Made by a program: the position numbers and the translations under genes
Part shown: positions 1 to 24,515 of the stretch, in pieces
Layout: the number at the start of each line of letters is the position of its first letter
Numbering within the stretch: the first letter of the stretch is position 1
Assembly: GCF_001194135.2 (NCBI RefSeq)
Contig: NC_068992.1
Location: 58,625,382 to 58,658,172 of the forward strand
Length of the DNA stretch: 32,791 nt
Source: Octopus bimaculoides
Taxonomy: Eukaryota
Reading direction: 5' to 3'
The notes under the pieces: model-generated
The model's input: the letters and a program-made list of their open reading frames with translations, nothing else
What the model was told of the DNA's origin: nothing
Databases searched by the model: none

Positions 1-41
<41 letters not shown>

Positions 42-49
42 CGTTTAGC

Positions 50-478
50 TTTTACTTGTGTCAGTCATGAGAATGCGGCCATGCTGGGGCTCTGCCTAGA
101 ACTATTTTTAGTCGAATGAATCGACCCCAGTACATTTTTTTAAAATCCCGGTAGTTATTCTGTCGACCTCTCTTGTCGAATCGCTAAGTTATGGGGACGT
201 AAACACACCGCTACCGGTTGTCAAACTGTGATGGGAGACAAACACAGACACCAAACACACATGCACACACCTGCAAACACACATACACACACATATACGT
301 ACACACTCACACGTATATACGGCGGGCTTCTTTCAGTTTCCGTTTATCAAATCCATTCAACAAGGCTTTGGTAGGCCATAGGCTATAGTTAAAGACACTT
401 ACTCAAGGTGCCACTCAGTGGGGCGGAACCCGGAACCATGTGTTTTGGAAGCAAGCTTCTTACCACACAGCCACGCCT
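50..478 (-). mobile_element. tRNA-headed SINE family A (octopus OR-like/CORE-like), near full length
   Basis: Reverse complement of the + copy at 12830-13230: tail TTTTACTTGTGTCAGTCA...GCGGCCATGCTGG, internal CA/TA tract, head ending CTTACCACACAGCCACGCCT. Confidence 0.9.
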
Positions 479-1835
479 ATAATTTCGTACAAGCACACAC
501 ATAGTTACACGCGGGCGTTCACACTCGCACACGTGTCATATCGAAGAGATAGCTTTACTGAATAGACTAACGGAATATAATAATTAATTGCAGAGTAAAT
601 CCAATTACTTTATGAATTCCAATTCAGAATCTGCAATCATTGATGTCGAGCAGAACTAATAGAAATAACAATAGCATGTAACTCTGGAGGACTCCCTAAT
701 TAATAAACATACTCATTATGTTAATGTAATTATTTAGTGGTTAAATATAAATAATGATCGATGGTTACGCTAGTGTCATAATGTCACAAGGAATTATTTT
801 TCCTTTAAAACCGTATTACTAGAAACAGTTTAACTTATTTTGAGTGATTGTGTTAGATATTAGCATTCTACAGATGAGTATATTAACTAGATTTCTTATT
901 GTATATAAAATCATCAGAAATTTTCCTGTGTATATTAAGTTGTTAATGAATTAGGCTAATCAAACATGATAAATTATATTTGATTATCAAAATGTTAGTT
1001 TAAGCATTTACACCTAATTGTATTATGTGATTAAAGGAAATACACTATGCTTGTTAACGAAGTGGTTAACCACTCAGTAAGCAAGTTAATACCAACAAGT
1101 TAACTTCTGAAAATGCTAACCAGAAATATTAATTACGAATCTTGTTAACTAAGATTGTTTATTCTGTTAGGTGCTCAATAATTTACTATGTGATGTTGAT
1201 ATTCTGCTATGTGATGTTGATATTCAGTTGTGAGGTGATTTAGCAGGGGACAGTGAACGACATACAAAATTCACTACCCTCGCGTGTTTGTTGATTTGGA
1301 ATCAATTCTCCAGGCACCCCCCATACACATTTATATATCCTGAATGTAATTTCATATAAATTTTTAATATTTTTATATATAATACCATCAGAAACGTAAG
1401 ATACCAGTCAACAGTTTTGGATGTCATGCTTTGATTATGAGATTACAGTACACATACGGTATTTGTATCGTATTTTTCTTACTATACATATATCAGTTTT
1501 TATATAAAGTGTAAAAACAAAGCATGCAAAATGATTACAAGTACATGAAATGAAAACTGAAGAAAAGGCAGCATTTTATTTTTAAAGTAAAGCATAAGTA
1601 ATAATGCTAGTGAAATGGCGGAAATGAAATTCAGATTTCACGTAAAAATAATGTTTTGAGCTTACGATAGAAATACAAAAAAGACATGATAATCACTACT
1701 TGTACGCCCACGTGTCATAACGGCACACATCAGCTGTACTTGGTGGAATCTTCTCGGCGCTTTGTGGGATTTCCTATTTGTGGTGTGTCATGTCTGTATT
1801 AAAAAAATCTGAATAAATCTAAACAAATCTGATAA

Positions 1836-2335
1836 AAGCAAAAATCGACAAAACCCAGTCAGACAGCAAACGCAGAATCTGTACAAAAAGAGACGAAATA
1901 TCACTAATCACTTGAGTGAATACAGTACAGTAACGCAAAAAGAGTATAGGCGCAGGGATACATTGGGATGTTAGCCAAGTGTGTTGTTTCAAAATAACAG
2001 AAAAGCGAACACGAACCGGAGACTGCAATAGAAAATAAGAATTACAGGATATAATGAGACTTCCTCATAAAATTGATCGTTCTATTGAAGCAAGAATAAT
2101 TGATGTGATTTTAGAGGACAAAATAAACAATGTAAAATCATAAACTTCACAATTGCCTGTGATAGAAGAGTAGAGTAGATACTAAATAAAATTAACGAAT
2201 AATGAAATATCAGGATCTAGCCAGAGTGTGAAGAGACTGTGGTAATTAGTACTCAGGGCACAACACCGACAATGCTACCTAACTGAATGAGAGAGAGAAT
2301 GCAACTGAGACTCGCATTGTCGACTTGCAGAAGCA
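1836..2335 (+). mobile_element. Old R4/Dong-type non-LTR retrotransposon relic (zinc knuckle + REL endonuclease region)
   Basis: Frameshifted hand translation: KIDKTQSDSKRRIC..., QKEYRRR, IHWDV, EHEPETAIENKNYRI**DF, IDRSIEAR, KYQDLAR, KRLW, IVDLQK. This parallels the motif order of the better-preserved copy at 2556-3160. Confidence 0.75.
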
Positions 2336-2397
2336 TTTTCACCAAACCTCAATATAATATTCCTGCTAATTAAATAATTAAATTAGCATGCACTAAT

Positions 2398-3237
<840 letters not shown>

Positions 3238-3319: not shown

Positions 3320-4915
3320 GTCGGAGAGAGAACCCACACATAATGTAGATTATCTCTGTGTCGAAGGAAATGCCCTCTTTCAATGATTTCCAGCGATGTC
3401 ATCCGCCCTATTGATGCATGCTGAATGTTGACCATCAATGTTGGCCAGTCTTAGGACTTCCACCTAACTTTTACTCAAATCACTAGTGGTTAGAACCGTC
3501 AACACCACCCTTGTCTTCTTCGAGTTGAACATGAAAAAGTTGAAAGATGCATGATCAAAGACGAAAACGTGTGTCGTCAGATGTTTTAATTTTCACCTTA
3601 CAAACTCTTTCTTCATAGCCACGAAGGTGTCAGCAAGACTCAGACACTGTCATAACTTTGTGCGAATCTCTAATAGATTTCAACGTTGCTTGTAGAGTTT
3701 ATCGCGAGCTCGCAAACACCCTAAGCTAGGGAGGTCTGAAAGTCGTGCATAGTTACCAAGCAGAATGCCCTCTGAACTAGACTATGGTCCCCGAGTACGT
3801 CGTCACTCTTGGTCAGCAGTAACCCTATATAGAATGAAAAGGTTTAGGACCACCGACCAAACAGCGCTACAGGAGAATCTAATATCATTTCACATGTCAA
3901 AAGCTTAATCCTAATTTTCATTCACCTACAACTACTGCTCCACCCGAGACGATCCGTGCAAAGACATGCCTAGCAAATAACGACTACGCTTGGCACACTC
4001 TTCTTTATGCAGAAGAGTTTGGAAAGAGATGTACCTTTTGAACGAAATAACAAGTTCGTTCCTCTAAAAGTGAAAGAACAGTGAAGAATAGTGAAGGCGA
4101 TTAAATGCTCGCCATTTCTGTCTGACCATATAGGGACAGCTTCTCAGGGATCTTTTTTTTTTTTATTAGACTGGCTGCCCTTATTGCATTTCCGTTCCCG
4201 TTTTTGCCCACCTGAAGGCCTTGCCCGTACCAGATACTATGTTCTATGCCCCGTGACGGTACGGAACCACATGCGCACGAGTTTTTTTTTATTACTGTGT
4301 GCTTGCATTAACCTGTTTTACTTCAGTATAGTGCTAACCACCAGAATGATCCGACACGTTTAGGTCACGCCCAGATTAGAACAACCTGGAAATCCATTCG
4401 TTACCAGTCAGACTGTTGGAACTGCTTGACTAAGTTTGTGTGCCGTTCACAATCCTCTGTCACGTTGGTCATGCTTACACTATCCCAGCTTGCGCTCAAG
4501 ATGACATTATACATGTTCACTAACGGAAGGGTGTGCCGCCCAAGAAAACACTTCTTCATACTTGAAGAAACCTGGCCAATATATTCCAGACAGCACATAA
4601 GTGGATCCAAATCTGAAGTCTCCACCTTCACGCTTGTTCACATCTCGCACCGCTTTCTCACCATCCGAGCCCTGAAAAGTCGTCCGCACCTTGAGTTCTA
4701 TGCCATTCCGAAAAATACGATCTGAGCCGACCGAATGATATATATACCTTCTACGCCCTGAGAGAGAAAGAAAAGCGTAAATACCTGACTTCTGGAAATT
4801 CTGGTCTCACTGATTACTCCTACATGTAAATTTAGTGACCTGAGGTCATTAAGAAAGTGACTTGCAAGAAAATTGAATCCAGGATTTGTGCATTTGCGCA
4901 ACTGATATTCTGTGA
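3320..4915 (-). mobile_element. Degenerate APE-endonuclease LINE (Tx1/L1-like ORF2), apparently with RT domain deleted
   Basis: Minus-strand ISCANA...HFLNDLRSLNLHVGVISETR (APE N-terminal xET motif), DVNKREGGDFR, VFLGRHTLPLVNMYNVIL (decayed GDWN position), QFQQSDW. Near 3420-3650, VAMKKEFV...NFFMFNSKKTRV...VEVLRLANIDG resembles, from recall, Tx1-like ORF2 C-termini. No YADD-type RT motif seen. Confidence 0.6.
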
Positions 4916-5535: not shown

Positions 5536-5591
<56 letters not shown>

Positions 5592-6179
5592 ATATATGTC
5601 TGTTTGTCTATTTGTCTGCATGTATGTATGTGTATAGTCGACATCTATACGCAATTTAACAATAGCTTTAGATATTAAAAAAAGGACAAAATAATAAAAC
5701 TGTGCCTTTCCCAAATGAAACAGGGCTAAGTACATCCAACTACAAAGATCACACACACACACGCACACACACACACACAAATGTATATGTCTGCATTGAT
5801 GAGAATAATAAGTATGGTCTCCGCTCTGCTGACCAGTCCAAGCAGATGGTTTTCAGGCATCTGTCTGTACAAGATAGTATCAACCCAGGCCGACAGTGTG
5901 TCAAACCGGTGCAACGCACTGTTGGCTAAAACTGATGTTCGCGCGATAACGTTTTCTTGTTTCAATTGACACTACGTCATTGAGACACCTTGATAGAATT
6001 GTGATTGCAGTGTGTGTGTGCGTAGAGGTGGTAGTGATGGTGGTGGTGTTGGTGGTTGGATGAGCGGGATGGTGGGAGAAGGGGCAGGAAGTTGAATGTA
6101 GGAAGGAGTTGGAGACGAGCAAAGAGTGAGAAATGGGGTTTTAGGAGTAAAAGACTTTGGTCTGAGATAGATAAACGCA

Positions 6180-6530
<351 letters not shown>

Positions 6531-7060: not shown

Positions 7061-7515
7061 GTAACAGAACAGAATAGAGCAGAAACGCTCTACATGTTTG
7101 TTTAAGTGTGGTATGCATACACACACATATGCACGCACGCACGCATGCACGCACGCACGCATGCATACATACAAACATAAATACATACGTACACATATAT
7201 GCATGCTTATATGCATAAGTAATGAGCTCCATGCATGGAACCCCCTTTGTCGTTTAGTCGCTTTCTAACTTCTGCTGCCGATAAAATATATATATATATA
7301 ATATATATATAATAAAAATATATATAATATATATATAATATAATATATATATAATATATATATAATAAAAATATATATATATATACTCACGTTTTGTACT
7401 CTGTTTCTCCTGTTTGTATTACCAAACCGCTCTGTGTGTGTGTGTGTGTGTGTGTGCGTGCGTGTGTGCGTGTGTGTGCGTGTGTGCGAGTCTGAGTGTT
7501 TACATACATTTGTAT

Positions 7516-7573
<58 letters not shown>

Positions 7574-7629
7574 GTAGATATATATTTATTTATTTATATA
7601 CATTTATATATTTATGCACACACACTCAC

Positions 7630-7674
<45 letters not shown>

Positions 7675-9689: not shown

Positions 9690-10315
9690 AGGTTTGGAGG
9701 TGATGTACAGAAATTATATAGAAAAAAATTAAGGTACTCAGAAATCTGGATGTTTGTACATTTACAGATTTTTATTAATGTCACATATTAAATAAAGCGC
9801 TTTTCACCTAGTCGTGTAGGATTTTCAAATTGAAAACAATTTATATATATATATATACACTCAGACATATATACATATATATGTATGTATGTATGTATAA
9901 ATATATATGTAAATATGTATGTATGTAATTATACCACACAGATGTTATTCATGTTCCGGGCGCCGTGGTTCTTTCGTTGCTGTGTAGATTTTGCTAACTT
10001 ATTATATATTTTTATATATATATTCTTGGCCTGTCCTTGTCTTTTGCCATCCGTTGTCGCTTACGCGTCTAAGGTATTCATTATGAATAAAGCGGACATC
10101 ATTAAACCCCCTAATTTCTTCTCTCCGGCCTATCTCCTCTCCGCTGCTGAAGATTGAAATCTGTTTATTCCCATGGTCAGTAGAAATAATAAACTCCATC
10201 GTTAAGATTTCCAGCTGCTCTCGTTCAGTTTAATTCAGTTCTGAAGGTTTAATGTCTTTTCGCGGATCTGCAACGCCAATCGATTATATCTGCTTTCCTT
10301 CTTTTCATTTTTTTT

Positions 10316-10568
10316 TTTTTAGTTGTTTCAGTTATTTGACTGTGGCCATGCTGCAGCACATTGTTGAAACGTTTTGACTAACGAATCGACCCCACTCTCC
10401 GTATTAATGTTTTTTAAAGCCTGGCATATATTCTGCTGGTCATCTTGCCAAACCGCTAAGTTACGGGGATACAAACAAACTAGCACCGGTTGTCAAGCGA
10501 TGGTGGATAAGCACAAAAATAAAGACACACATATATATATATATATATATATACGACGAGCTTCTTTC
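10316..10568 (-). mobile_element. SINE family A, 3' two-thirds (ends shortly before an N-gap)
   Basis: TTGTTTCAGTTATTTGACTGTGGCCATGCTG...CCGCTAAGTTACGGGG...CCGGTTGTCAAGCGATGG...ACGACGAGCTTCTTTCA. Confidence 0.88.
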
Positions 10569-10759
10569 ATCATCATCATGTCTATTTNNNNNNNNNNNNN
10601 NNNNNNNNNNNNNNNNNNNNNNNNNNNNNNNNNNNNNNNNNNNNNNNNNNNNNNNNNNNNNNNNNNNNNNNNNNNNNNNNNNNNNNNNNNNNNNNNNNNN
10701 NNNNNNNNNNNNNNNNNNNNNNNNNNNNNNNNNNNNNNNNNNNNNNNNNNNNNNNNNNT

Positions 10760-11029: not shown

Positions 11030-11294
11030 TATGGTTGTTCATATGTTTCGACCGTGTAGCGAGATCGTATATGATTGTTTATATGATCGTATATGTTTGT
11101 TTATATCTTTCGACCGTGTAGCGAGATCGTATAGGTACTTTCGATTTAACGCCGAACTCTCCGAAAAAAATCTTCGTAAAATAAGATACATCATAGAATT
11201 TGTTAGCGTTTAAGGTTTAAAGTTGATTTTGATAGGATTCACGGTGCTTGGCAAAGATTTACTACATCAAACTATCATGAAGTAAATCTTGTCG

Positions 11295-11637
11295 TTGACT
11301 TGTTTCAGTCATATAACTGCAGCCATCCTGGGTCACCGTTTTGAAGAGTTCAATCAAAGAAATCGTCCCCGGTAGTTATTTTTAAACCTGGTACTTATTC
11401 TGTTGGTCTCTTTTGCCGAACCTCTAGATCAAGGAGGCGTAAATAAACCAACGTCTGTTGTCAAGTGAGGGACAAACAAAAACAGAAAAACACACACTCA
11501 CAAACACACACACACAAACACACACATACGTCCATGTTTTTTTGCAACGTCATGTACCCAGATATGTATGTATATGTACATGTAGATGAAGGTATGTAGA
11601 TACATGTACATATATATGCATATACTCATATATTGTT

Positions 11638-11695
<58 letters not shown>

Positions 11696-11871
11696 TACAA
11701 CGGGCTTCTCTCAATTTCCCTCTATCAAATCTATTTATAAGCCTTTGGTCTTCCCAAAGCTATAGCAGAAGACACTCGGCCAAGGTACCACGCAATGGGC
11801 CTGAATCCGAAGTCATGTGATTGGCTATGTGACTGGGAAGTAAGCCTCTCATTACACGTCACTCCTGTACC
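11295..11871 (-). mobile_element. SINE family A, diverged full-length copy with expanded internal microsatellite
   Basis: Tail ACTTGTTTCAGTCATATAACTGCAGCC, body GGTCTCTTTTGCCGAACC, CA/TA/GA tract, head AGAAGACACTCGGCCAAGGTACCACGC...CACTCCTGTACCT. Confidence 0.82.
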
Positions 11872-12056
11872 TAGGTAGAAGAATAAACATTAGCTGGTAT
11901 AAGGGAAATAGAATTATTTAGAGAATGAATAATTTAGAGATAATTCAGTAGTTTTAATTGAATTACTCATTTCAGTCATATAAATTATATGGCATTACAA
12001 ACTGATAGGGATGACAACCTGCCATTTCCTTTTCAATGACAATAACCATGTTTGAT

Positions 12057-12732: not shown

Positions 12733-12829
<97 letters not shown>

Positions 12830-12831
<2 letters not shown>

Positions 12832-13230
12832 CACAGGAGTGGCTGTGTGGTTTAGTAGCTTGCTTACCAACCACATGGTCCCGGGTCCAATCCCACTGCG
12901 TGGCACCTTGGGCAAGTGTCTTCTACTATAGCCTCGGGCCGACCAAAGCCTTGTGAGTGGATTTGGTAGACGGAAACTGAAAGAAGCCCGTCGTATATAT
13001 GTATGTATATGTGTGTATGTTTGTGTGTCTGTGTTTGTCCCCCTAGCATTGCTTGACAACCGATGCTGGTGTGTTTATGTCCCCCGTCACTTAGCAGTTC
13101 CGTAAAAGAGACCGATAGAATAAGTACTGGGCTTACAAAGAATAAGTCCCGGGGTCGATTTGCTCGACTAAAGGCGGTGCTCCAGCATGGCCGCAGTCAA
13201 ATGACTGAAACAAGTAAAAGAGTAAAAAAA
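12830..13230 (+). mobile_element. SINE family A, full length and apparently young
   Basis: A-box-like TGGCTGTGTGG (12840-12850), B-box-like GGGTCCAATCCC (12883-12894), CORE-like ACCTTGGGCAAGT (12905-12917), internal GT/TA tract, tail CCAGCATGGCCGCAGTCAAATGACTGAAACAAGTAAAAG plus A-rich end. Confidence 0.93.
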
Positions 13231-13761
13231 AAAATATATATATAATATATATATATATAGGTTTGTACCTCACCAGTCGTAATCGACTTGCCCCTCTTCT
13301 GAAAAAGAGAAATAATCACAATTATCATTGTTGTTATTTTGTGTTGTTTTTGTTGCTGACAGTGTTGTTGCTATTATTGTTGTTATTTATTTCATTCAGT
13401 CAGTACCTCGTCGTTCTCCTGATATAAGATTGCTACATATCAATGCTTGCTATAGAAGCAACCGTCTATAGCAAACATCTTTCTTTTTGTTCTGAGTTTT
13501 CAGTAAAGCTGAGACACCAGAGAGGTCTCTACGTCTCGTGAGGAAGAGGACAGTGGAGTGTGTCTCTTGACCACTGTTACTAGCACACCAGCTGCAGTAA
13601 ACACAATGACAGTGGCTGTCGCATTAGTATCAACACCAATAAAAAAATAAAGACAACAACATCTACTGCAGATATACACCAAAAGACTCACGAAAAAATA
13701 TTCCTACAACAAAAAAAACCTCAGAAAATGTATGGTTAAGGAGCACGACAATGTAGCACGC

Positions 13762-15833: not shown

Positions 15834-16323
15834 AATGTCATTTTCTCGGACGAGTGATCCTTTCCTTTATTTCCGACCACCGGCCGAGTATACGTGTGGA
15901 GACAGCCAAAAGAAGCATTTAACCCAGACTGCCTTCTTCCAACTGTTAAACATGGAGGAGGATCTGTGATGATCTGGGTGGGGGGGGGGCTATGTCTTGC
16001 AAACCCGTCAGCCCAATGGCTTCCCTTCATGGCAGAATTAATAGTCAAGACTAAACATTTTTATCTGATCAGATTCATCCTATGGTTGCAGAGCTGTTTC
16101 CAGAGGGAAACACAATCTTTTAGGATGATAATGCAACAATTCACACAGTTAAAGTTGTTACTGAATGATACGAGGAACATTCTAGTGAAGTTGAACATCT
16201 TATCTGGCCACCCCAGTCCCCAGATCTCAATATTATTGAATATTCATGGTGGGTGCCTTTTAGAAAAACAAGTAAGAAGTCGATATCTTCCAGCATTATC
16301 ACTGCAAGAACTGGAGACTGTTT
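15834..16323 (+). pseudogene. Tc1-family DDE transposase catalytic domain, part 1
   Basis: NVIFSDE*SF..FPTTGRVYVWRQPKEAFNPDCLLPTVKHGGGSVMIW, LHGRINSQD, DQIHPMVAELFPEGNTIF*DDNA, IWPPQSPDLNIIE, LEKQVRSRY..LQELETV. All three catalytic motifs are present; frameshifts and stops disrupt the ORF. Confidence 0.95.
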
Positions 16324-17220
16324 GGATCTTTTTGGTTTGACGGGCAACATTTTTCATTTATGTTTTATGTAGTGTTTTTAGTACCGAAACACTTTCAAAC
16401 TTCGAATACTTGTATATTTTGTGTTATAGAACAGATAAAAAATTTTGTATTCGAAGTTATTCCATGTAAAAAATTGTTGTATTTCGGTAATTTCAACCAG
16501 TCACTGACGTCTATTGAGATGAAAACAATTACGCCGTGGAATGTAAACAACAGTGTCATGGGATCTTTTCCCTTGAATAAAATTAGTGCCGTTGTTTGTC
16601 AACAACAACTATCCGTTGTCAACAACAACTATCAACGGTATATATTTCGTTTGTCACTGTTATTTATGACATCGTTCATGCGTTTGTACTGGTTTTAGCT
16701 TTAGGGTTTTAGGGTTAGGGTTCGGGTTTTAGAGTTAGAGTTAGTTTTAGGATTACGGTTAGGGTTATGATTATTTTTACCATAACCTCACTCATAACCT
16801 TAACCCTAACCCTAAAACCCTAAAACCCTATAACTCATAACCATAACCCTAACCCTAACCCTAACCCCAACCCTAACCCTAAAACCCTAACCCTAACTCT
16901 AAAACCCGAACCCTAAACCTAAAACCCTAAACCCTCATTAGGGAATAATGATATAATTAAGCAGGGAATAACACACTTGACACCGGCAAAAATTTATTGT
17001 TTACAAAAGAGCACTAACTGTATTCAGCTGAATAGACGTCAGTGATTGGTTGAAATTACAGAAATACGACAACTTTAACATGAAATAACTTGCGATGTAC
17101 AATTTTTTGTTAAGAAGGCTAAGAGAAAAAGATGTTTTATATGACACATTCTACCAGTGTCCCAAGTTTGAAAGTGTTTCGATAAGAAAACAAGTGTTGC
17201 CCGTCAAACCAAAAAGATCC
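16324..17220. mobile_element. 897-bp non-autonomous TIR element (MITE-like; Merlin-like by GG termini + 8-bp TSD)
   Basis: Perfect 26-bp TIR GGATCTTTTTGGTTTGACGGGCAACA (16324-16349; reverse complement at 17195-17220) and exact TSD GACTGTTT (16316-16323, 17221-17228). Imperfect subterminal inverted blocks CGAAACACTTTCAAACTT and GTAATTTCAACCA-TCACTGACGTCTATT. Confidence 0.92.
16691..16935. repeat. Head-to-head degenerate telomere-type repeats: (TTAGGG/TTTTAGGG)n then (CCCTAA/CCCTAAAA)n
   Basis: G-rich arm about 16691-16769, short AT spacer, C-rich arm about 16781-16935. Confidence 0.93.
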
Positions 17221-17328
17221 GACTGTTTTAGCGGAAGAATGGACAAAAATTCCTTTGGAAACAATTCAAACTTTGTACGATTCCATACCTCGTAGAATTC
17301 AAGCTGTAATTACTGCCAAAGGCATCCT
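17221..17328 (+). pseudogene. Tc1-family transposase C-terminus, part 2
   Basis: After removing the insertion the frame reads ELETVLAEEWTKIPLETIQTLYDSIPRRIQAVITAKG, a canonical Tc1 C-terminal motif. It runs into an N-gap. Confidence 0.93.
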
Positions 17329-17679
17329 NNNNNNNNNNNNNNNNNNNNNNNNNNNNNNNNNNNNNNNNNNNNNNNNNNNNNNNNNNNNNNNNNNNNNNNN
17401 NNNNNNNNNNNNNNNNNNNNNNNNNNNNNNNNNNNNNNNNNNNNNNNNNNNNNNNNNNNNNNNNNNNNNNNNNNNNNNNNNNNNNNNNNNNNNNNNNNNN
17501 NNNNNNNNNNNNNNNNNNNNNNNNNNNNNNNNNNNNNNNNNNNNNNNNNNNNNNNNNNNNNNNNNNNNNNNNNNNNNNNNNNNNNNNNNNNNNNNNNNNN
17601 NNNNNNNNNNNNNNNNNNNNNNNNNNNNNNNNNNNNNNNNNNNNNNNNNNNNNNNNNNNNNNNNNNNNNNNNNNNNNNN

Positions 17680-19587: not shown

Positions 19588-19847
19588 TTTATCTATCTAT
19601 CTATCTATCTATCTATATATATATATATATATATATACTTACACACACACACACACACACATACACACACACGCATATGTATGTATGTATGTATGCATGT
19701 ATTGTACAAATGNNNNNNNNNNTTTATCTATCTATCTATCTATCTATCTATATATATATATATATATATATACTTACACACACACACACACACACATACA
19801 CACACACGCATATGTATGTATGTATGTATGCATGTATTGTACAAATG
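19588..19847. other. 125-bp duplication flanking a 10-N gap (probable assembly overlap artefact)
   Basis: 19588-19712 and 19723-19847 appear identical, including microsatellite lengths. Confidence 0.85.
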
Positions 19848-24037: not shown

Positions 24038-24515
24038 AGCACAGGTACGTATGCGGGGTTAAGAACCTACCCTTGCAACCATGCAATTTCAGGTTCAGTT
24101 CCACTACGCGGCAATTAGGACAGGTGTCTTCTACTATAGCTCCAGGCAGACCAGTGCTTTTCGAGTAAATTTCGTTGTCTGAAGCCGAGAGGAAAGCTGC
24201 CGTGTGTGTGTGTATGTGTGTGTGTGTGTGTGTGTATGTGTGTGTGTGTGTGCGTGCGTGCACGTGAGTGTGTGTGTGTATGTATGTATGTGTGGGTGCG
24301 TGCATGTGTGTGTGTGTGATTGTATTTTCTTTGTCCTCCGACCGTTTGACAACCAGAGTTGATGCGTTTAGGTCTCCGTAAGCCAGCGGTTCAGCAATAA
24401 AGATCGATGGACTATAAAAATTATAAGCACTAAGGTTGATTTGTACGAGTAAACCTCTGGAGGTGATGCTCCAGCAACGTCGCAATCCAATTGCTTGAAA
24501 TATGTAAACATAAAA
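24038..24515 (+). mobile_element. SINE family A, old full-length copy
   Basis: GCACAGG...GGTTCAGTTCCACTACGCGG...GTGTCTTCTACTATAGC, GT tract, TTTGACAACC...GGTGATGCTCCAGC...TGAAATATGTAAAC. Confidence 0.78.

What the first reader, a model, noticed from the sequence alone, without database searches (positions are those of the whole stretch)
16324..17220. Telomere-repeat-carrying TIR element (Merlin-like MITE) with exact 8-bp TSD
Seen: perfect 26-bp TIRs starting GG, exact TSD GACTGTTT, about 200-bp imperfect inverted arms, a central (TTAGGG)n/(CCCTAA)n cassette and no transposase. Established: GG termini with 8-9-bp TSDs characterise Merlin (IS1016-related) elements, whereas hAT elements with 8-bp TSDs usually start CAG or TAG. 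TTAGGG is the molluscan telomere repeat. Inference: a mobile family that spreads interstitial telomeric sequence, possibly seeding telomere-protein binding sites or fragile sites across the genome. Perfect TIRs and TSD suggest fairly recent mobilisation. I know of no description of such a family in cephalopods, though telomere-like repeats inside DNA transposons are reported in other animals.
Basis: partly seen in the sequence, partly recalled or inferred. Interest (0 to 1): 0.8.

Follow-up and report, generated by a model that had tools for sequence, protein, structure and literature searches.

The report
Octopus jumping element carrying telomere-like repeats
This is a real 897-bp non-coding "cut-and-paste" transposon of an octopus genome, probably moved by a Merlin-type enzyme, and it carries a mirrored block of decayed telomere-like repeats; it is a tidy but fairly ordinary example of how such repeats get scattered inside chromosomes.

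Summary
Window 16324-17220 is an 897-bp element with perfect 26-bp terminal inverted repeats (TIRs) starting GG. It has an exact 8-bp target-site duplication (TSD), GACTGTTT, and no coding capacity. Removing the element plus one TSD copy restores a continuous Tc1-like transposase reading frame, so it is a true insertion.

The whole element is an imperfect palindrome. The "cassette" is the mirrored inner part: a degenerate (TTAGGG)n array facing a (CCCTAA)n array.

I found a second full copy in Octopus bimaculoides contig LGKD02092233.1. It is 93% identical and has a different 8-bp TSD, TAACGTTG. It has the same variant-by-variant left array and a shorter right array. The family is therefore mobile, and the array is inherited rather than added to each copy.

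On that contig a related element end lies 545 bp after a Merlin (DDE_Tnp_IS1595) transposase gene, in the orientation of that gene's right end. The matching left end is missing. Other octopus Merlin elements also show GG termini and 8-bp TSDs. Merlin membership is likely but not proven.

Genome-wide copy number, presence in Repbase or Dfam, and any telomere-related function could not be tested. Verdict: a new member of a known kind, of modest interest.

The parts
16316..16323 (.). Left copy of the 8-bp target-site duplication, GACTGTTT
   Evidence: one of only two occurrences in the window. It directly abuts the left TIR.
16324..16349 (+). Left TIR, GGATCTTTTTGGTTTGACGGGCAACA. It is a perfect 26 nt, or 29 nt to 16352 with one mismatch.
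   Evidence: (0 expected by chance), I11.
16350..16690 (+). Left subterminal arm. Conserved blocks at 16376-16433 and 16470-16531 pair with the right arm, and a GACGTC motif lies at 16506. An arm-specific stretch at about 16575-16690 contains a 2 x 20-bp direct repeat (16596-16633).
   Evidence: (I3, I5, D4).
16691..16779 (+). Left degenerate (TTAGGG)n-like array, with the G-rich strand on + reading toward the centre. It holds one G-quadruplex-type motif at 16704-16726.
   Evidence: The array is about 96% identical, variant unit by variant unit, to the array in the O. bimaculoides copy.
16780..16939 (-). Right degenerate (CCCTAA)n-like array, with the G-rich strand on - reading toward the centre. 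Its outer part, 16887-16931, mirrors 16700-16744 at 96%. It holds three G-quadruplex-type motifs on the - strand.
   Evidence: (I1, I6). The array is 112 nt shorter in the second copy.
16940..17194 (-). Right subterminal arm, an inverted homologue of the left arm. A GACGTC motif lies at 17035.
   Evidence: It is 88.6% identical to the right arm of the L004 copy.
17195..17220 (-). Right TIR, the perfect reverse complement of the left TIR
17221..17228 (.). Right copy of the TSD, GACTGTTT
15843..16323 (+). Host sequence, upstream part: a decayed Tc1-like transposase (frameshifts and stop codons) that the element interrupts
   Evidence: Sleeping Beauty SB100X matches at E = 1.2e-31, with a gap-free alignment across the excision junction. 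Pfam DDE_3.
17229..17328 (+). Host sequence, downstream part: the Tc1-like transposase C-terminus (AEEWTKIPLETIQTLYDSIPRRIQAVITAKG), which runs into the N gap at 17329-17679

Best explanation
Window 16324-17220 is one copy of a non-autonomous, palindromic TIR DNA transposon family (MITE-like, 0.7-0.9 kb) of an Octopus genome. The genome is O. bimaculoides or a very close relative.

Most likely mechanism: a DDE transposase supplied in trans, most probably of the Merlin/IS1595 type, binds the identical 26-bp GG-termini and perhaps the conserved subterminal blocks. It cuts the element out and re-inserts it at an 8-bp staggered cut, and repair of that cut produces the 8-bp duplication. Here the target was an old Tc1-like transposase relic.

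The central telomere-like repeats are a passive passenger. They were acquired once, before the sampled copies diverged. They appear head-to-head because the whole element is an inverted duplication of one half (end - subterminal region - TTAGGG-like array). Since then they have decayed by point mutation, and deletions or slippage have changed the array length.

Every transposition therefore deposits a short, degenerate, G-quadruplex-capable interstitial telomeric sequence.

Shown: the insertion, TIRs and TSD; a second copy with a new TSD; inheritance of the array; palindromy; lack of coding capacity.

Inferred: the Merlin enzyme, the one-half foldback origin, and the passenger status of the array.
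For: Insertion and boundaries. TIR and TSD are significant. Deleting the element plus one TSD gives ...LSLQELETVLAEEWTKIPLETIQ..., which aligns without a gap to Sleeping Beauty transposase (E = 1.2e-31).

Family and mobility.
- O. bimaculoides contig LGKD02092233.1 (L004) carries a 710-bp copy at 5575-6284.
- Both its TIRs read GGATCTTTGGGGTTTGACGGGCAACA, and its TSD is a different 8 bp, TAACGTTG.
- It is 93.4% identical over 709 aligned nt, K2P 0.07.
- A fragment of the arm block is present in O. sinensis (L006 11886-12045).

Inherited array. The left array is identical in the order of its variant units between the two copies. Within the window copy, the outer 45 nt of the two arrays mirror each other at 96% (I6).

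Palindrome. (z = -24).

Merlin link.
- GG termini and 8-9-bp TSDs define Merlin (PMC8101967).
- O. bimaculoides has 191 Merlin proteins, the most among the bilaterians surveyed in that paper.
- L004 4505-4602 is an element end, GGATCTTTTTTAAAACGG..., that is 88.75% identical to element nt 19-98.
- That end lies 545 bp past the stop codon of the Merlin gene P0004 (Pfam DDE_Tnp_IS1595, E = 5e-17), in right-end orientation.
- It lies 115 nt beyond a conserved Merlin subterminal motif, matching the 128-nt geometry of the O. sinensis Merlin in L005.
- Another octopus Merlin-bearing element has GG-starting TIRs and 8-bp TSDs at two paralogous sites.
- GACGTC motifs lie 150-215 nt from the ends both in the element and in the L005 Merlin.

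No coding capacity..
Against: - No element with a Merlin ORF between two GGATCTTTTT-type ends was recovered.
- In L004 the expected left end is absent. The end at 4602 could instead be a truncated family member that landed beside, or replaced, the Merlin terminus.
- The TIRs of the other octopus Merlins (GGTACTATTTAAG..., GGCGATGTTTCG...) show no significant similarity to this TIR beyond the GG.
- Only two full copies, one related end and one fragment were seen, so copy number is unknown.
- 8-bp TSDs also occur in hAT, P and some Mutator-like elements.
- The foldback origin is inferred from symmetry alone.
- Positions 9-10 of the TIR differ between the copies but are the same in both arms of each copy. 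Simple neutral decay does not explain this.
Confidence: 0.7

Rival explanations
1. It is a non-autonomous element of another superfamily that also makes roughly 8-bp duplications. Candidates are hAT, P, a Mutator-like or Foldback/Phantom element, or an undescribed superfamily. On this view the neighbouring Merlin gene in L004 is a coincidence.
For: - 8-bp TSDs are not unique to Merlin.
- Long inverted arms that contain tandem repeats are the hallmark of Foldback- and Galileo-type elements (PMC4168063 appears in the search listing; the resemblance rests on my own knowledge).
- The left end of the putative Merlin parent was not found.
- TIR similarity to verified octopus Merlins is not significant.
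Against: - The termini are GG, not the CAG/TAG (YARNG) of hAT or the CA... of P elements (my own knowledge of those consensus sequences).
- Foldback elements make 9-bp TSDs, whereas both copies here have exactly 8.
- A related end lies in the correct orientation and at the correct distance after a Merlin ORF.
- Other octopus Merlins obey the same GG plus 8-bp rule.
Confidence: 0.22
2. The telomere-like arrays are not passengers. They were added by telomerase or by telomere capture at breaks in individual copies, or they are a selected functional module (telomere-protein binding, a seed for new telomeres, or a G-quadruplex element) that helps the element or the host.
For: - The head-to-head orientation, with G-strands pointing at the centre, is the geometry of two fused chromosome ends.
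- Each arm keeps at least one G-quadruplex-type motif.
- An unrelated-looking inverted-repeat-flanked locus in O. sinensis (L005 7082-7663) also holds a TTAGGG-like array.
Against: - The two copies share the same order of degenerate units. This excludes per-copy telomerase addition.
- The arrays are decayed, with 74-78% matches and perfect runs of at most 24 nt.
- The right array has lost 112 nt in one copy. That looks like neutral decay rather than constraint.
- The head-to-head layout follows automatically from whole-element palindromy.
Confidence: 0.06
3. It is not a mobile element at all. It is a local fold-back (palindromic) duplication or an assembly artefact around an interstitial telomeric tract.
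For: The window is a gap-rich draft (nine N runs). It contains at least one likely assembly duplication, at 19588-19847.
Against: - There is no gap inside the element.
- It precisely interrupts a Tc1 reading frame with an 8-bp duplication.
- An independent contig carries the same structure at a different site with a different 8-bp duplication.
Confidence: 0.02

Closest known systems
Merlin superfamily DNA transposons and their short non-autonomous derivatives (Feschotte 2004; survey in PMC8101967)
   Same: TIRs begin 5'-GG, and TIR length falls in the reported 24-462 bp range. TSDs are 8 bp. The host genome is unusually rich in Merlin transposases. A related end sits next to a DDE_Tnp_IS1595 gene.
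   Different: No autonomous copy with both matching ends was recovered. Whole-element palindromy with a mirrored telomere-like array is not mentioned for Merlin in the survey I read: a search of its text for 'telomer' and 'MITE' found nothing.
Foldback-type elements: Drosophila FB (Phantom/MULE-related) and Galileo (P superfamily)
   Same: They have very long inverted arms, with inner parts made of tandem repeats that vary in number between copies. They have strong hairpin potential and little or no coding sequence.
   Different: FB makes 9-bp TSDs and Galileo 7-bp TSDs (my own knowledge). Here the TSD is 8 bp, the termini are GG, and the repeats are telomere-like hexamers.
Tandem-repeat-carrying non-autonomous elements of molluscs (bivalve pearl/DTC84-type elements; Helentron-derived elements of Crassostrea gigas, PMC7492417)
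   Same: These are mollusc mobile elements that disperse short tandem arrays through the genome.
   Different: They are rolling-circle (Helentron) derivatives without cut-and-paste TIRs or 8-bp TSDs, and their repeats are satellite-like units of about 150 bp rather than telomeric hexamers. PMC7492417 only appeared in the search listing and I did not read it, so this comparison rests on my own knowledge.
Mobile elements associated with telomeric repeats: ciliate Tel-1/TBE1, Paramecium chromosome-capping Helitrons (PMC13085455), rotifer Athena/Penelope-like elements, and C. elegans elements holding TTAGGC tracts
   Same: Each is a transposable element physically linked to the host's telomere repeat.
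   Different: In those elements the repeats lie at the ends, or are added by reverse transcription, or the elements sit at real telomeres. Here the array is internal, mirrored, decayed and carried to interstitial sites by a TIR element. Apart from PMC13085455, which appeared in the search listing and which I did not read, these comparisons rest on my own knowledge.
Interstitial telomeric sequences (ITS), including the head-to-head fusion-type ITS such as human 2q13
   Same: They are degenerate TTAGGG tracts away from chromosome ends, and the fusion type shares the head-to-head orientation. Reviews propose spread by transposable elements as one origin (PMC6410037, PMC9693754).
   Different: Classical short ITS are single-orientation insertions made at break repair. 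Fusion-type ITS are unique loci. Neither has TIRs, TSDs or paralogous copies.

Membership tests
Merlin (IS1595/IS1016-related) superfamily | TIRs start with 5'-GG | tested here: met
   Both ends of both full copies, and the related end in L004, start GGATC. The rule is taken from PMC8101967.
Merlin (IS1595/IS1016-related) superfamily | 8- or 9-bp target-site duplication | tested here: met
   GACTGTTT in the window and TAACGTTG in L004. Both are exactly 8 bp.
Merlin (IS1595/IS1016-related) superfamily | Shares its ends with an autonomous element that encodes a DDE_Tnp_IS1595 transposase | tested here: inconclusive
   A related end (88.75% identity over 80 nt) lies 545 bp 3' of the Merlin ORF P0004, in right-end orientation. 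The left end was not found. No other O. bimaculoides Merlin locus could be retrieved.
MITE (miniature inverted-repeat transposable element) | TIRs plus TSD, and no coding capacity | tested here: met
MITE (miniature inverted-repeat transposable element) | Small size (usually under about 800 bp) and high, homogeneous copy number | not testable with these tools
   The copies are 897 and 710 bp, at the upper edge of the usual size. Only 2 full copies, 1 end and 1 fragment were seen, in 33 kb of window plus about 112 kb of octopus loci. No octopus genome is searchable by DNA here, and the two metagenome-contig scans and one viral-contig scan found nothing.
hAT superfamily | 8-bp TSD together with termini of the YARNG type (CAG/TAG...) | tested here: not met
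   The TSD length fits, but the termini are GGATC. The hAT consensus is from my own knowledge.
P superfamily | 7-8-bp TSD together with CA-starting TIRs | tested here: not met
   The termini are GGATC. The P consensus is from my own knowledge.
Foldback (FB/Phantom) elements | Long inverted arms with internal tandem repeats, and 9-bp TSDs | tested here: not met
   The arm architecture resembles FB, but both TSDs are 8 bp.
Telomerase-inserted short interstitial telomeric sequence | A single-orientation TTAGGG tract inserted at a break and absent from paralogous or orthologous sequence | tested here: not met
   There are two opposed arrays. The same variant order is present in an independent copy.

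The most novel reading that the evidence does not exclude
Octopus genomes may harbour Merlin-mobilised palindromic elements that began as a transposon half healed by telomerase, or captured at a chromosome end, and then folded back. Their head-to-head telomere arrays could still matter to the host. They might act as dispersed binding sites for telomere proteins, G-quadruplex or fragile sites, or seeds for new telomeres, and so contribute to the extensive chromosome rearrangement seen in cephalopods. The symmetric change at TIR positions 9-10 in both arms of each copy would then reflect active arm-to-arm correction in a hairpin intermediate.
Probability: 0.08. Interest if true: 0.6.

Novelty: new member of a known kind. 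Interest (0 to 1): 0.3.

Why it matters
[quoted passage not shown] Neither passage I read names a concrete element family as an example. This family is a clean one. It has defined ends and two insertions with different 8-bp duplications. Its telomere-like array is demonstrably inherited with the element.

It also adds a probable non-autonomous partner to the unusually large Merlin population reported for O. bimaculoides.

The practical value is mainly for annotation. TTAGGG hits inside octopus scaffolds should not be read as relics of chromosome fusion, or as assembly errors, without first checking for these TIRs.

No host function is shown, and the arrays look as though they are decaying. The biological weight is therefore modest.

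Tried and rejected
1. I used spurious ORFs of the element to fish for other copies. The exact look-up of the 112-aa ORF found nothing on record, and the homology search found no candidates.
2. Exact-pattern scans for the 22-nt TIR and for a conserved arm block found nothing in JGI metagenome contigs or IMG/VR. Those collections evidently hold no octopus DNA.
3. I looked for the left end of the L004 Merlin. Inverted-repeat and fuzzy TIR searches found only an 18-nt pair with about a 0.1 probability of arising by chance, by my own rough estimate.
4. I tested TIR similarity to other octopus Merlins by local alignment against shuffles. It was not significant: 16/30 ungapped matches at best.
5. I tried other Merlin proteins. 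P0010 is not on record. P0142 and P0014 come from non-octopus eukaryote-like contigs in ENA metagenomes and carry no family members.
6. An Rfam scan of the window found no known RNA family, so there is no annotated hairpin RNA or miRNA.
7. Literature searches for a described telomere-repeat MITE in octopus or elsewhere found none in the searchable library. Repbase Reports and Dfam are not covered.
8. I considered per-copy telomerase addition, a local palindromic rearrangement and an assembly artefact. All three are rejected by the second copy.

Full report
**1. The observation**

The sequence at 16324-17220 is as described.
- The 26-mer GGATCTTTTTGGTTTGACGGGCAACA occurs exactly twice in the 32.8-kb window, once on each strand, at 16324-16349 and 17195-17220. 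This holds even with three mismatches allowed, and none is expected in shuffles.
- The pairing extends to 29 nt with one mismatch (I11).
- GACTGTTT abuts both ends (16316-16323 and 17221-17228). These are its only two occurrences in the window.
- The neighbouring bases differ, so the duplication is exactly 8 bp.
- TTAGGG dimers with at most one mismatch occur 15 times, all inside the element, against 0.03 expected.
- The longest ORF is 112 aa. It has no Pfam match and no relative among 5.8 billion proteins.

**2. It is a true insertion**

The flanks encode a decayed Tc1-like transposase. Deleting 16324-17228 (the element plus one TSD copy) joins ...RSRYLPALSLQELETV to LAEEWTKIPLETIQTLYDSIPRRIQAVITAKG in one frame.

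I stitched the three reading-frame pieces of the relic into one peptide. It matches the Sleeping Beauty SB100X catalytic domain at E = 1.2e-31. The alignment crosses the junction without a gap. The peptide also hits Pfam DDE_3. This paralogous "empty site" fixes the boundaries and the 8-bp duplication independently of the TIRs.

**3. Anatomy**

- Aligned to its own reverse complement, the element shows homology over its whole length.
- Conserved blocks include 16376-16433 with 17133-17190 (78%) and 16470-16531 with 17015-17076 (87%).
- About 115 nt are private to the left arm. This stretch includes a 2 x 20-bp direct repeat at 16596-16633.
- The inner arms are the telomere-like arrays: 16691-16779 (G-strand on +) and 16780-16939 (G-strand on -).
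- The arrays mirror each other down to the variant units. 16700-16744 and 16887-16931 are 96% complementary over 45 nt (I6).
- The arrays are degenerate. They hold 4 and 12 perfect hexamers, perfect stretches of 14 and 24 nt at most, and 74-78% matches by Tandem Repeats Finder.
- One G-quadruplex-type motif lies on the + strand and three on the - strand.
- As single-stranded DNA the element folds end to end, dG -196.8 against -80.4 +/- 4.8 kcal/mol for shuffles, z = -24.

**4. Finding relatives**

No tool here searches octopus genomes by DNA, so I went through proteins.
Merlin TIRs are 24-462 bp, start GG, and come with 8- or 9-bp TSDs.
- The same survey reports that O. bimaculoides has 191 Merlin-like proteins, the most among the bilaterians it surveyed.
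- I took one of those proteins (KOF79200.1) from the supplement and searched with it. I then searched again with its relative P0004.
- I fetched the loci that encode the octopus hits. L001, L003, L005 and L006 come from O. sinensis, L002 from O. vulgaris and L004 from O. bimaculoides.

**5. A second copy**

BLASTN of the element against these loci found a full copy in the 8-kb O. bimaculoides contig LGKD02092233.1, at L004 5575-6284.
- It is 710 bp. Both TIRs read GGATCTTTGGGGTTTGACGGGCAACA.
- It is flanked by a different perfect 8-bp duplication, TAACGTTG.
- Over 709 aligned positions the copies are 93.4% identical (K2P 0.07). They differ by six indels, and in every case the sequence is absent from L004.
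- The left TTAGGG-like array is the same unit by unit, including TTAGCT, TTCGGG, TTTTAGAG, TTAGTT and TTACGG.
- The right array is 112 nt shorter in L004.

Three conclusions follow. The family has transposed at least twice and made 8-bp duplications each time. The array was present in the common ancestor of the copies and was not added to each copy. The array length is unstable.

The window also shares octopus SINE-like repeats with the O. sinensis and O. vulgaris loci, at up to 92% identity. Together with the 93% match between the two element copies, this places the window in an Octopus genome, most likely O. bimaculoides.

In about 104 kb of O. sinensis and O. vulgaris DNA, only a 160-nt fragment of the arm block was found (L006 11886-12045, 83%).

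**6. The Merlin link**

On the same contig, L004 4505-4602 on the minus strand is an element end: GGATCTTTTTTAAAACGGGGGCCACATTTTTCATTAACG...
- It shares the first 10 nt with the element's TIR and is 88.75% identical to element nt 19-98.
- It lies 545 bp past the stop codon of P0004, a 277-aa protein with Pfam DDE_Tnp_IS1595 (E = 5e-17). Its orientation is the one expected for that gene's right terminus.
- Just inside it lies ACTTTCACTTCTGACAGC (4470-4487). This motif recurs in the subterminal regions of the O. sinensis Merlin copies L005 and L006.
- The distance from this motif to the terminus is 115 nt in L004 and 128 nt in L005.
- GACGTC motifs sit 150-215 nt from the ends both in the element and in the L005 Merlin.

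The weakness is the left end.
- Homology of L004 to the O. sinensis Merlins starts only 36 bp before the ATG.
- No GGATC-type end lies upstream.
- Only a marginal 18-nt inverted repeat pairs the two sides.
- The O. sinensis relative has a different TIR, GGTACTATTTAAGAAGAGTGG..., and its similarity to the element's TIR is not significant.
- No other O. bimaculoides Merlin locus was retrievable.

An independent octopus Merlin-bearing element (L001 and L003, about 8.7 kb) has GG-starting TIRs and 8-bp TSDs at two paralogous sites, GCAAATCT and CAAGGCTT. The GG plus 8-bp rule therefore holds for Merlins in these genomes.

I rate Merlin membership at roughly 0.7. Two defining features are met, and the third, a shared autonomous partner, is only suggested.

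**7. How it most likely works**

Shown: it is a non-coding TIR element that inserts with 8-bp duplications and carries its array along.

Inferred:
- A Merlin DDE transposase supplied in trans recognises the identical termini.
- The palindrome arose by inverted duplication of one half-element (end, subterminal region, array). That step automatically places the arrays head to head.
- The array was acquired once. The source could have been telomere-adjacent DNA, telomerase healing of a break, or growth of a microsatellite. These cannot be told apart here.
- The array is now decaying.

One thing remains unexplained. Positions 9-10 of the TIR are TT in both arms of the window copy and GG in both arms of the L004 copy. 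The inner arms of a single copy, by contrast, are only 66-90% alike. This points either to arm-to-arm correction of the terminal stem or to subfamily masters with co-evolved ends.

**8. Comparison with what is known, and novelty**

In kind, this is a non-autonomous TIR transposon of MITE/foldback architecture.
- Carrying internal tandem repeats is known for other mobile elements, including some in molluscs (PMC7492417, a title from the search listing that I did not read).
- Links between mobile elements and telomere repeats are also known. Examples are the Paramecium Helitrons (PMC13085455, likewise only listed) and the ciliate, rotifer and nematode cases I know of.
- Reviews propose transposon-mediated spread of interstitial telomeric sequences, mostly without concrete families.
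- TTAGGG is the reported octopus telomere repeat (Adachi et al. 2014, as cited in PMC6160780).
- I found no description of this family in the searchable literature.
- Repbase and Dfam cannot be consulted here, and the O. bimaculoides repeat library may already hold it.

I therefore file it as a new member of a known kind with an unusual passenger.

**9. Verdict**

The structural interpretation is essentially right. The superfamily assignment is probable. The "recent" label is only relative (K2P 0.07 between copies). The functional speculation is untested, and the visible decay of the arrays does not favour it. Interest is modest, at 0.3.

Noticed in passing
window 15843-16323 and 17229-17328: This is a decayed Tc1-like transposase relic with frameshifts near 16090 and 16255 and several stop codons. 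It is the target of the insertion, lacks its N-terminal half, and runs into the N gap at 17329-17679.
   Followed up: yes
L005 (O. sinensis VCDQ01004827.1) 7082-7663: About 175 nt of imperfect inverted arms flank a single-orientation TTAGGG-like array at 7392-7499, which includes TTTTAGAG variants. This may be a second, unrelated inverted-repeat element carrying a telomere-like tract. No clear ends or TSD were found.
   Followed up: partly
window 16332-16333 and 17211-17212, against L004 5583-5584 and 6275-6276: TIR positions 9-10 are TT in both arms of the window copy and GG in both arms of the O. bimaculoides copy. This is a symmetric four-base difference that neutral decay does not explain.
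   Followed up: partly
L006 (O. sinensis CM016877.1) 11632-11882 and L005 9415-11751: A 251-bp palindromic MITE in L006 has the same TIR (GGTACTCTTTAAGAAGAGTGGTCCCGGTGCGCGCAC) as the Merlin copy in L005. This is a clear Merlin/MITE pair in O. sinensis, and the MITE is inserted right beside the fragment of the telomere-repeat family.
   Followed up: partly
L001 4266-12988 and L003 4253-12989 (O. sinensis chromosomes CM016860 and CM016861): An 8.7-kb element, 99.6% identical between two chromosomes, has roughly 350-bp TIRs starting GGCGATGTTTCG and 8-bp TSDs (GCAAATCT, CAAGGCTT). It carries the Merlin ORF P0077. Short derivatives with the same ends interrupt the Merlin ORF in L005 (10778-11249) and lie at L006 about 11190-11600.
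   Followed up: partly
L001 about 300-3144: This is a large palindromic structure with arms of about 1.2 kb. It contains roughly 120-bp tandem repeats, a piece of a Merlin ORF and the Merlin subterminal motif. It suggests that foldback-like rearranged Merlin derivatives are common in octopus.
   Followed up: no
window 16-481, 10300-10570, 11292-11520, 12822-13260, 24092-24252: These are copies of an octopus SINE-like repeat shared with the O. sinensis and O. vulgaris loci at 70-92% identity. They were useful as evidence that the window is octopus DNA.
   Followed up: partly
window 19588-19847: This is a perfect 135-bp tandem duplication of a microsatellite-rich stretch around a 10-N gap (19713-19722). 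It is probably a scaffolding artefact.
   Followed up: no
L007-L011 (ENA assemblies ERZ26052287 and ERZ25070786): Merlin transposase ORFs 60-64% identical to the octopus protein lie in long eukaryote-like contigs of metagenome assemblies, among reverse-transcriptase genes. They contain no octopus repeats and no member of the family.
   Followed up: partly
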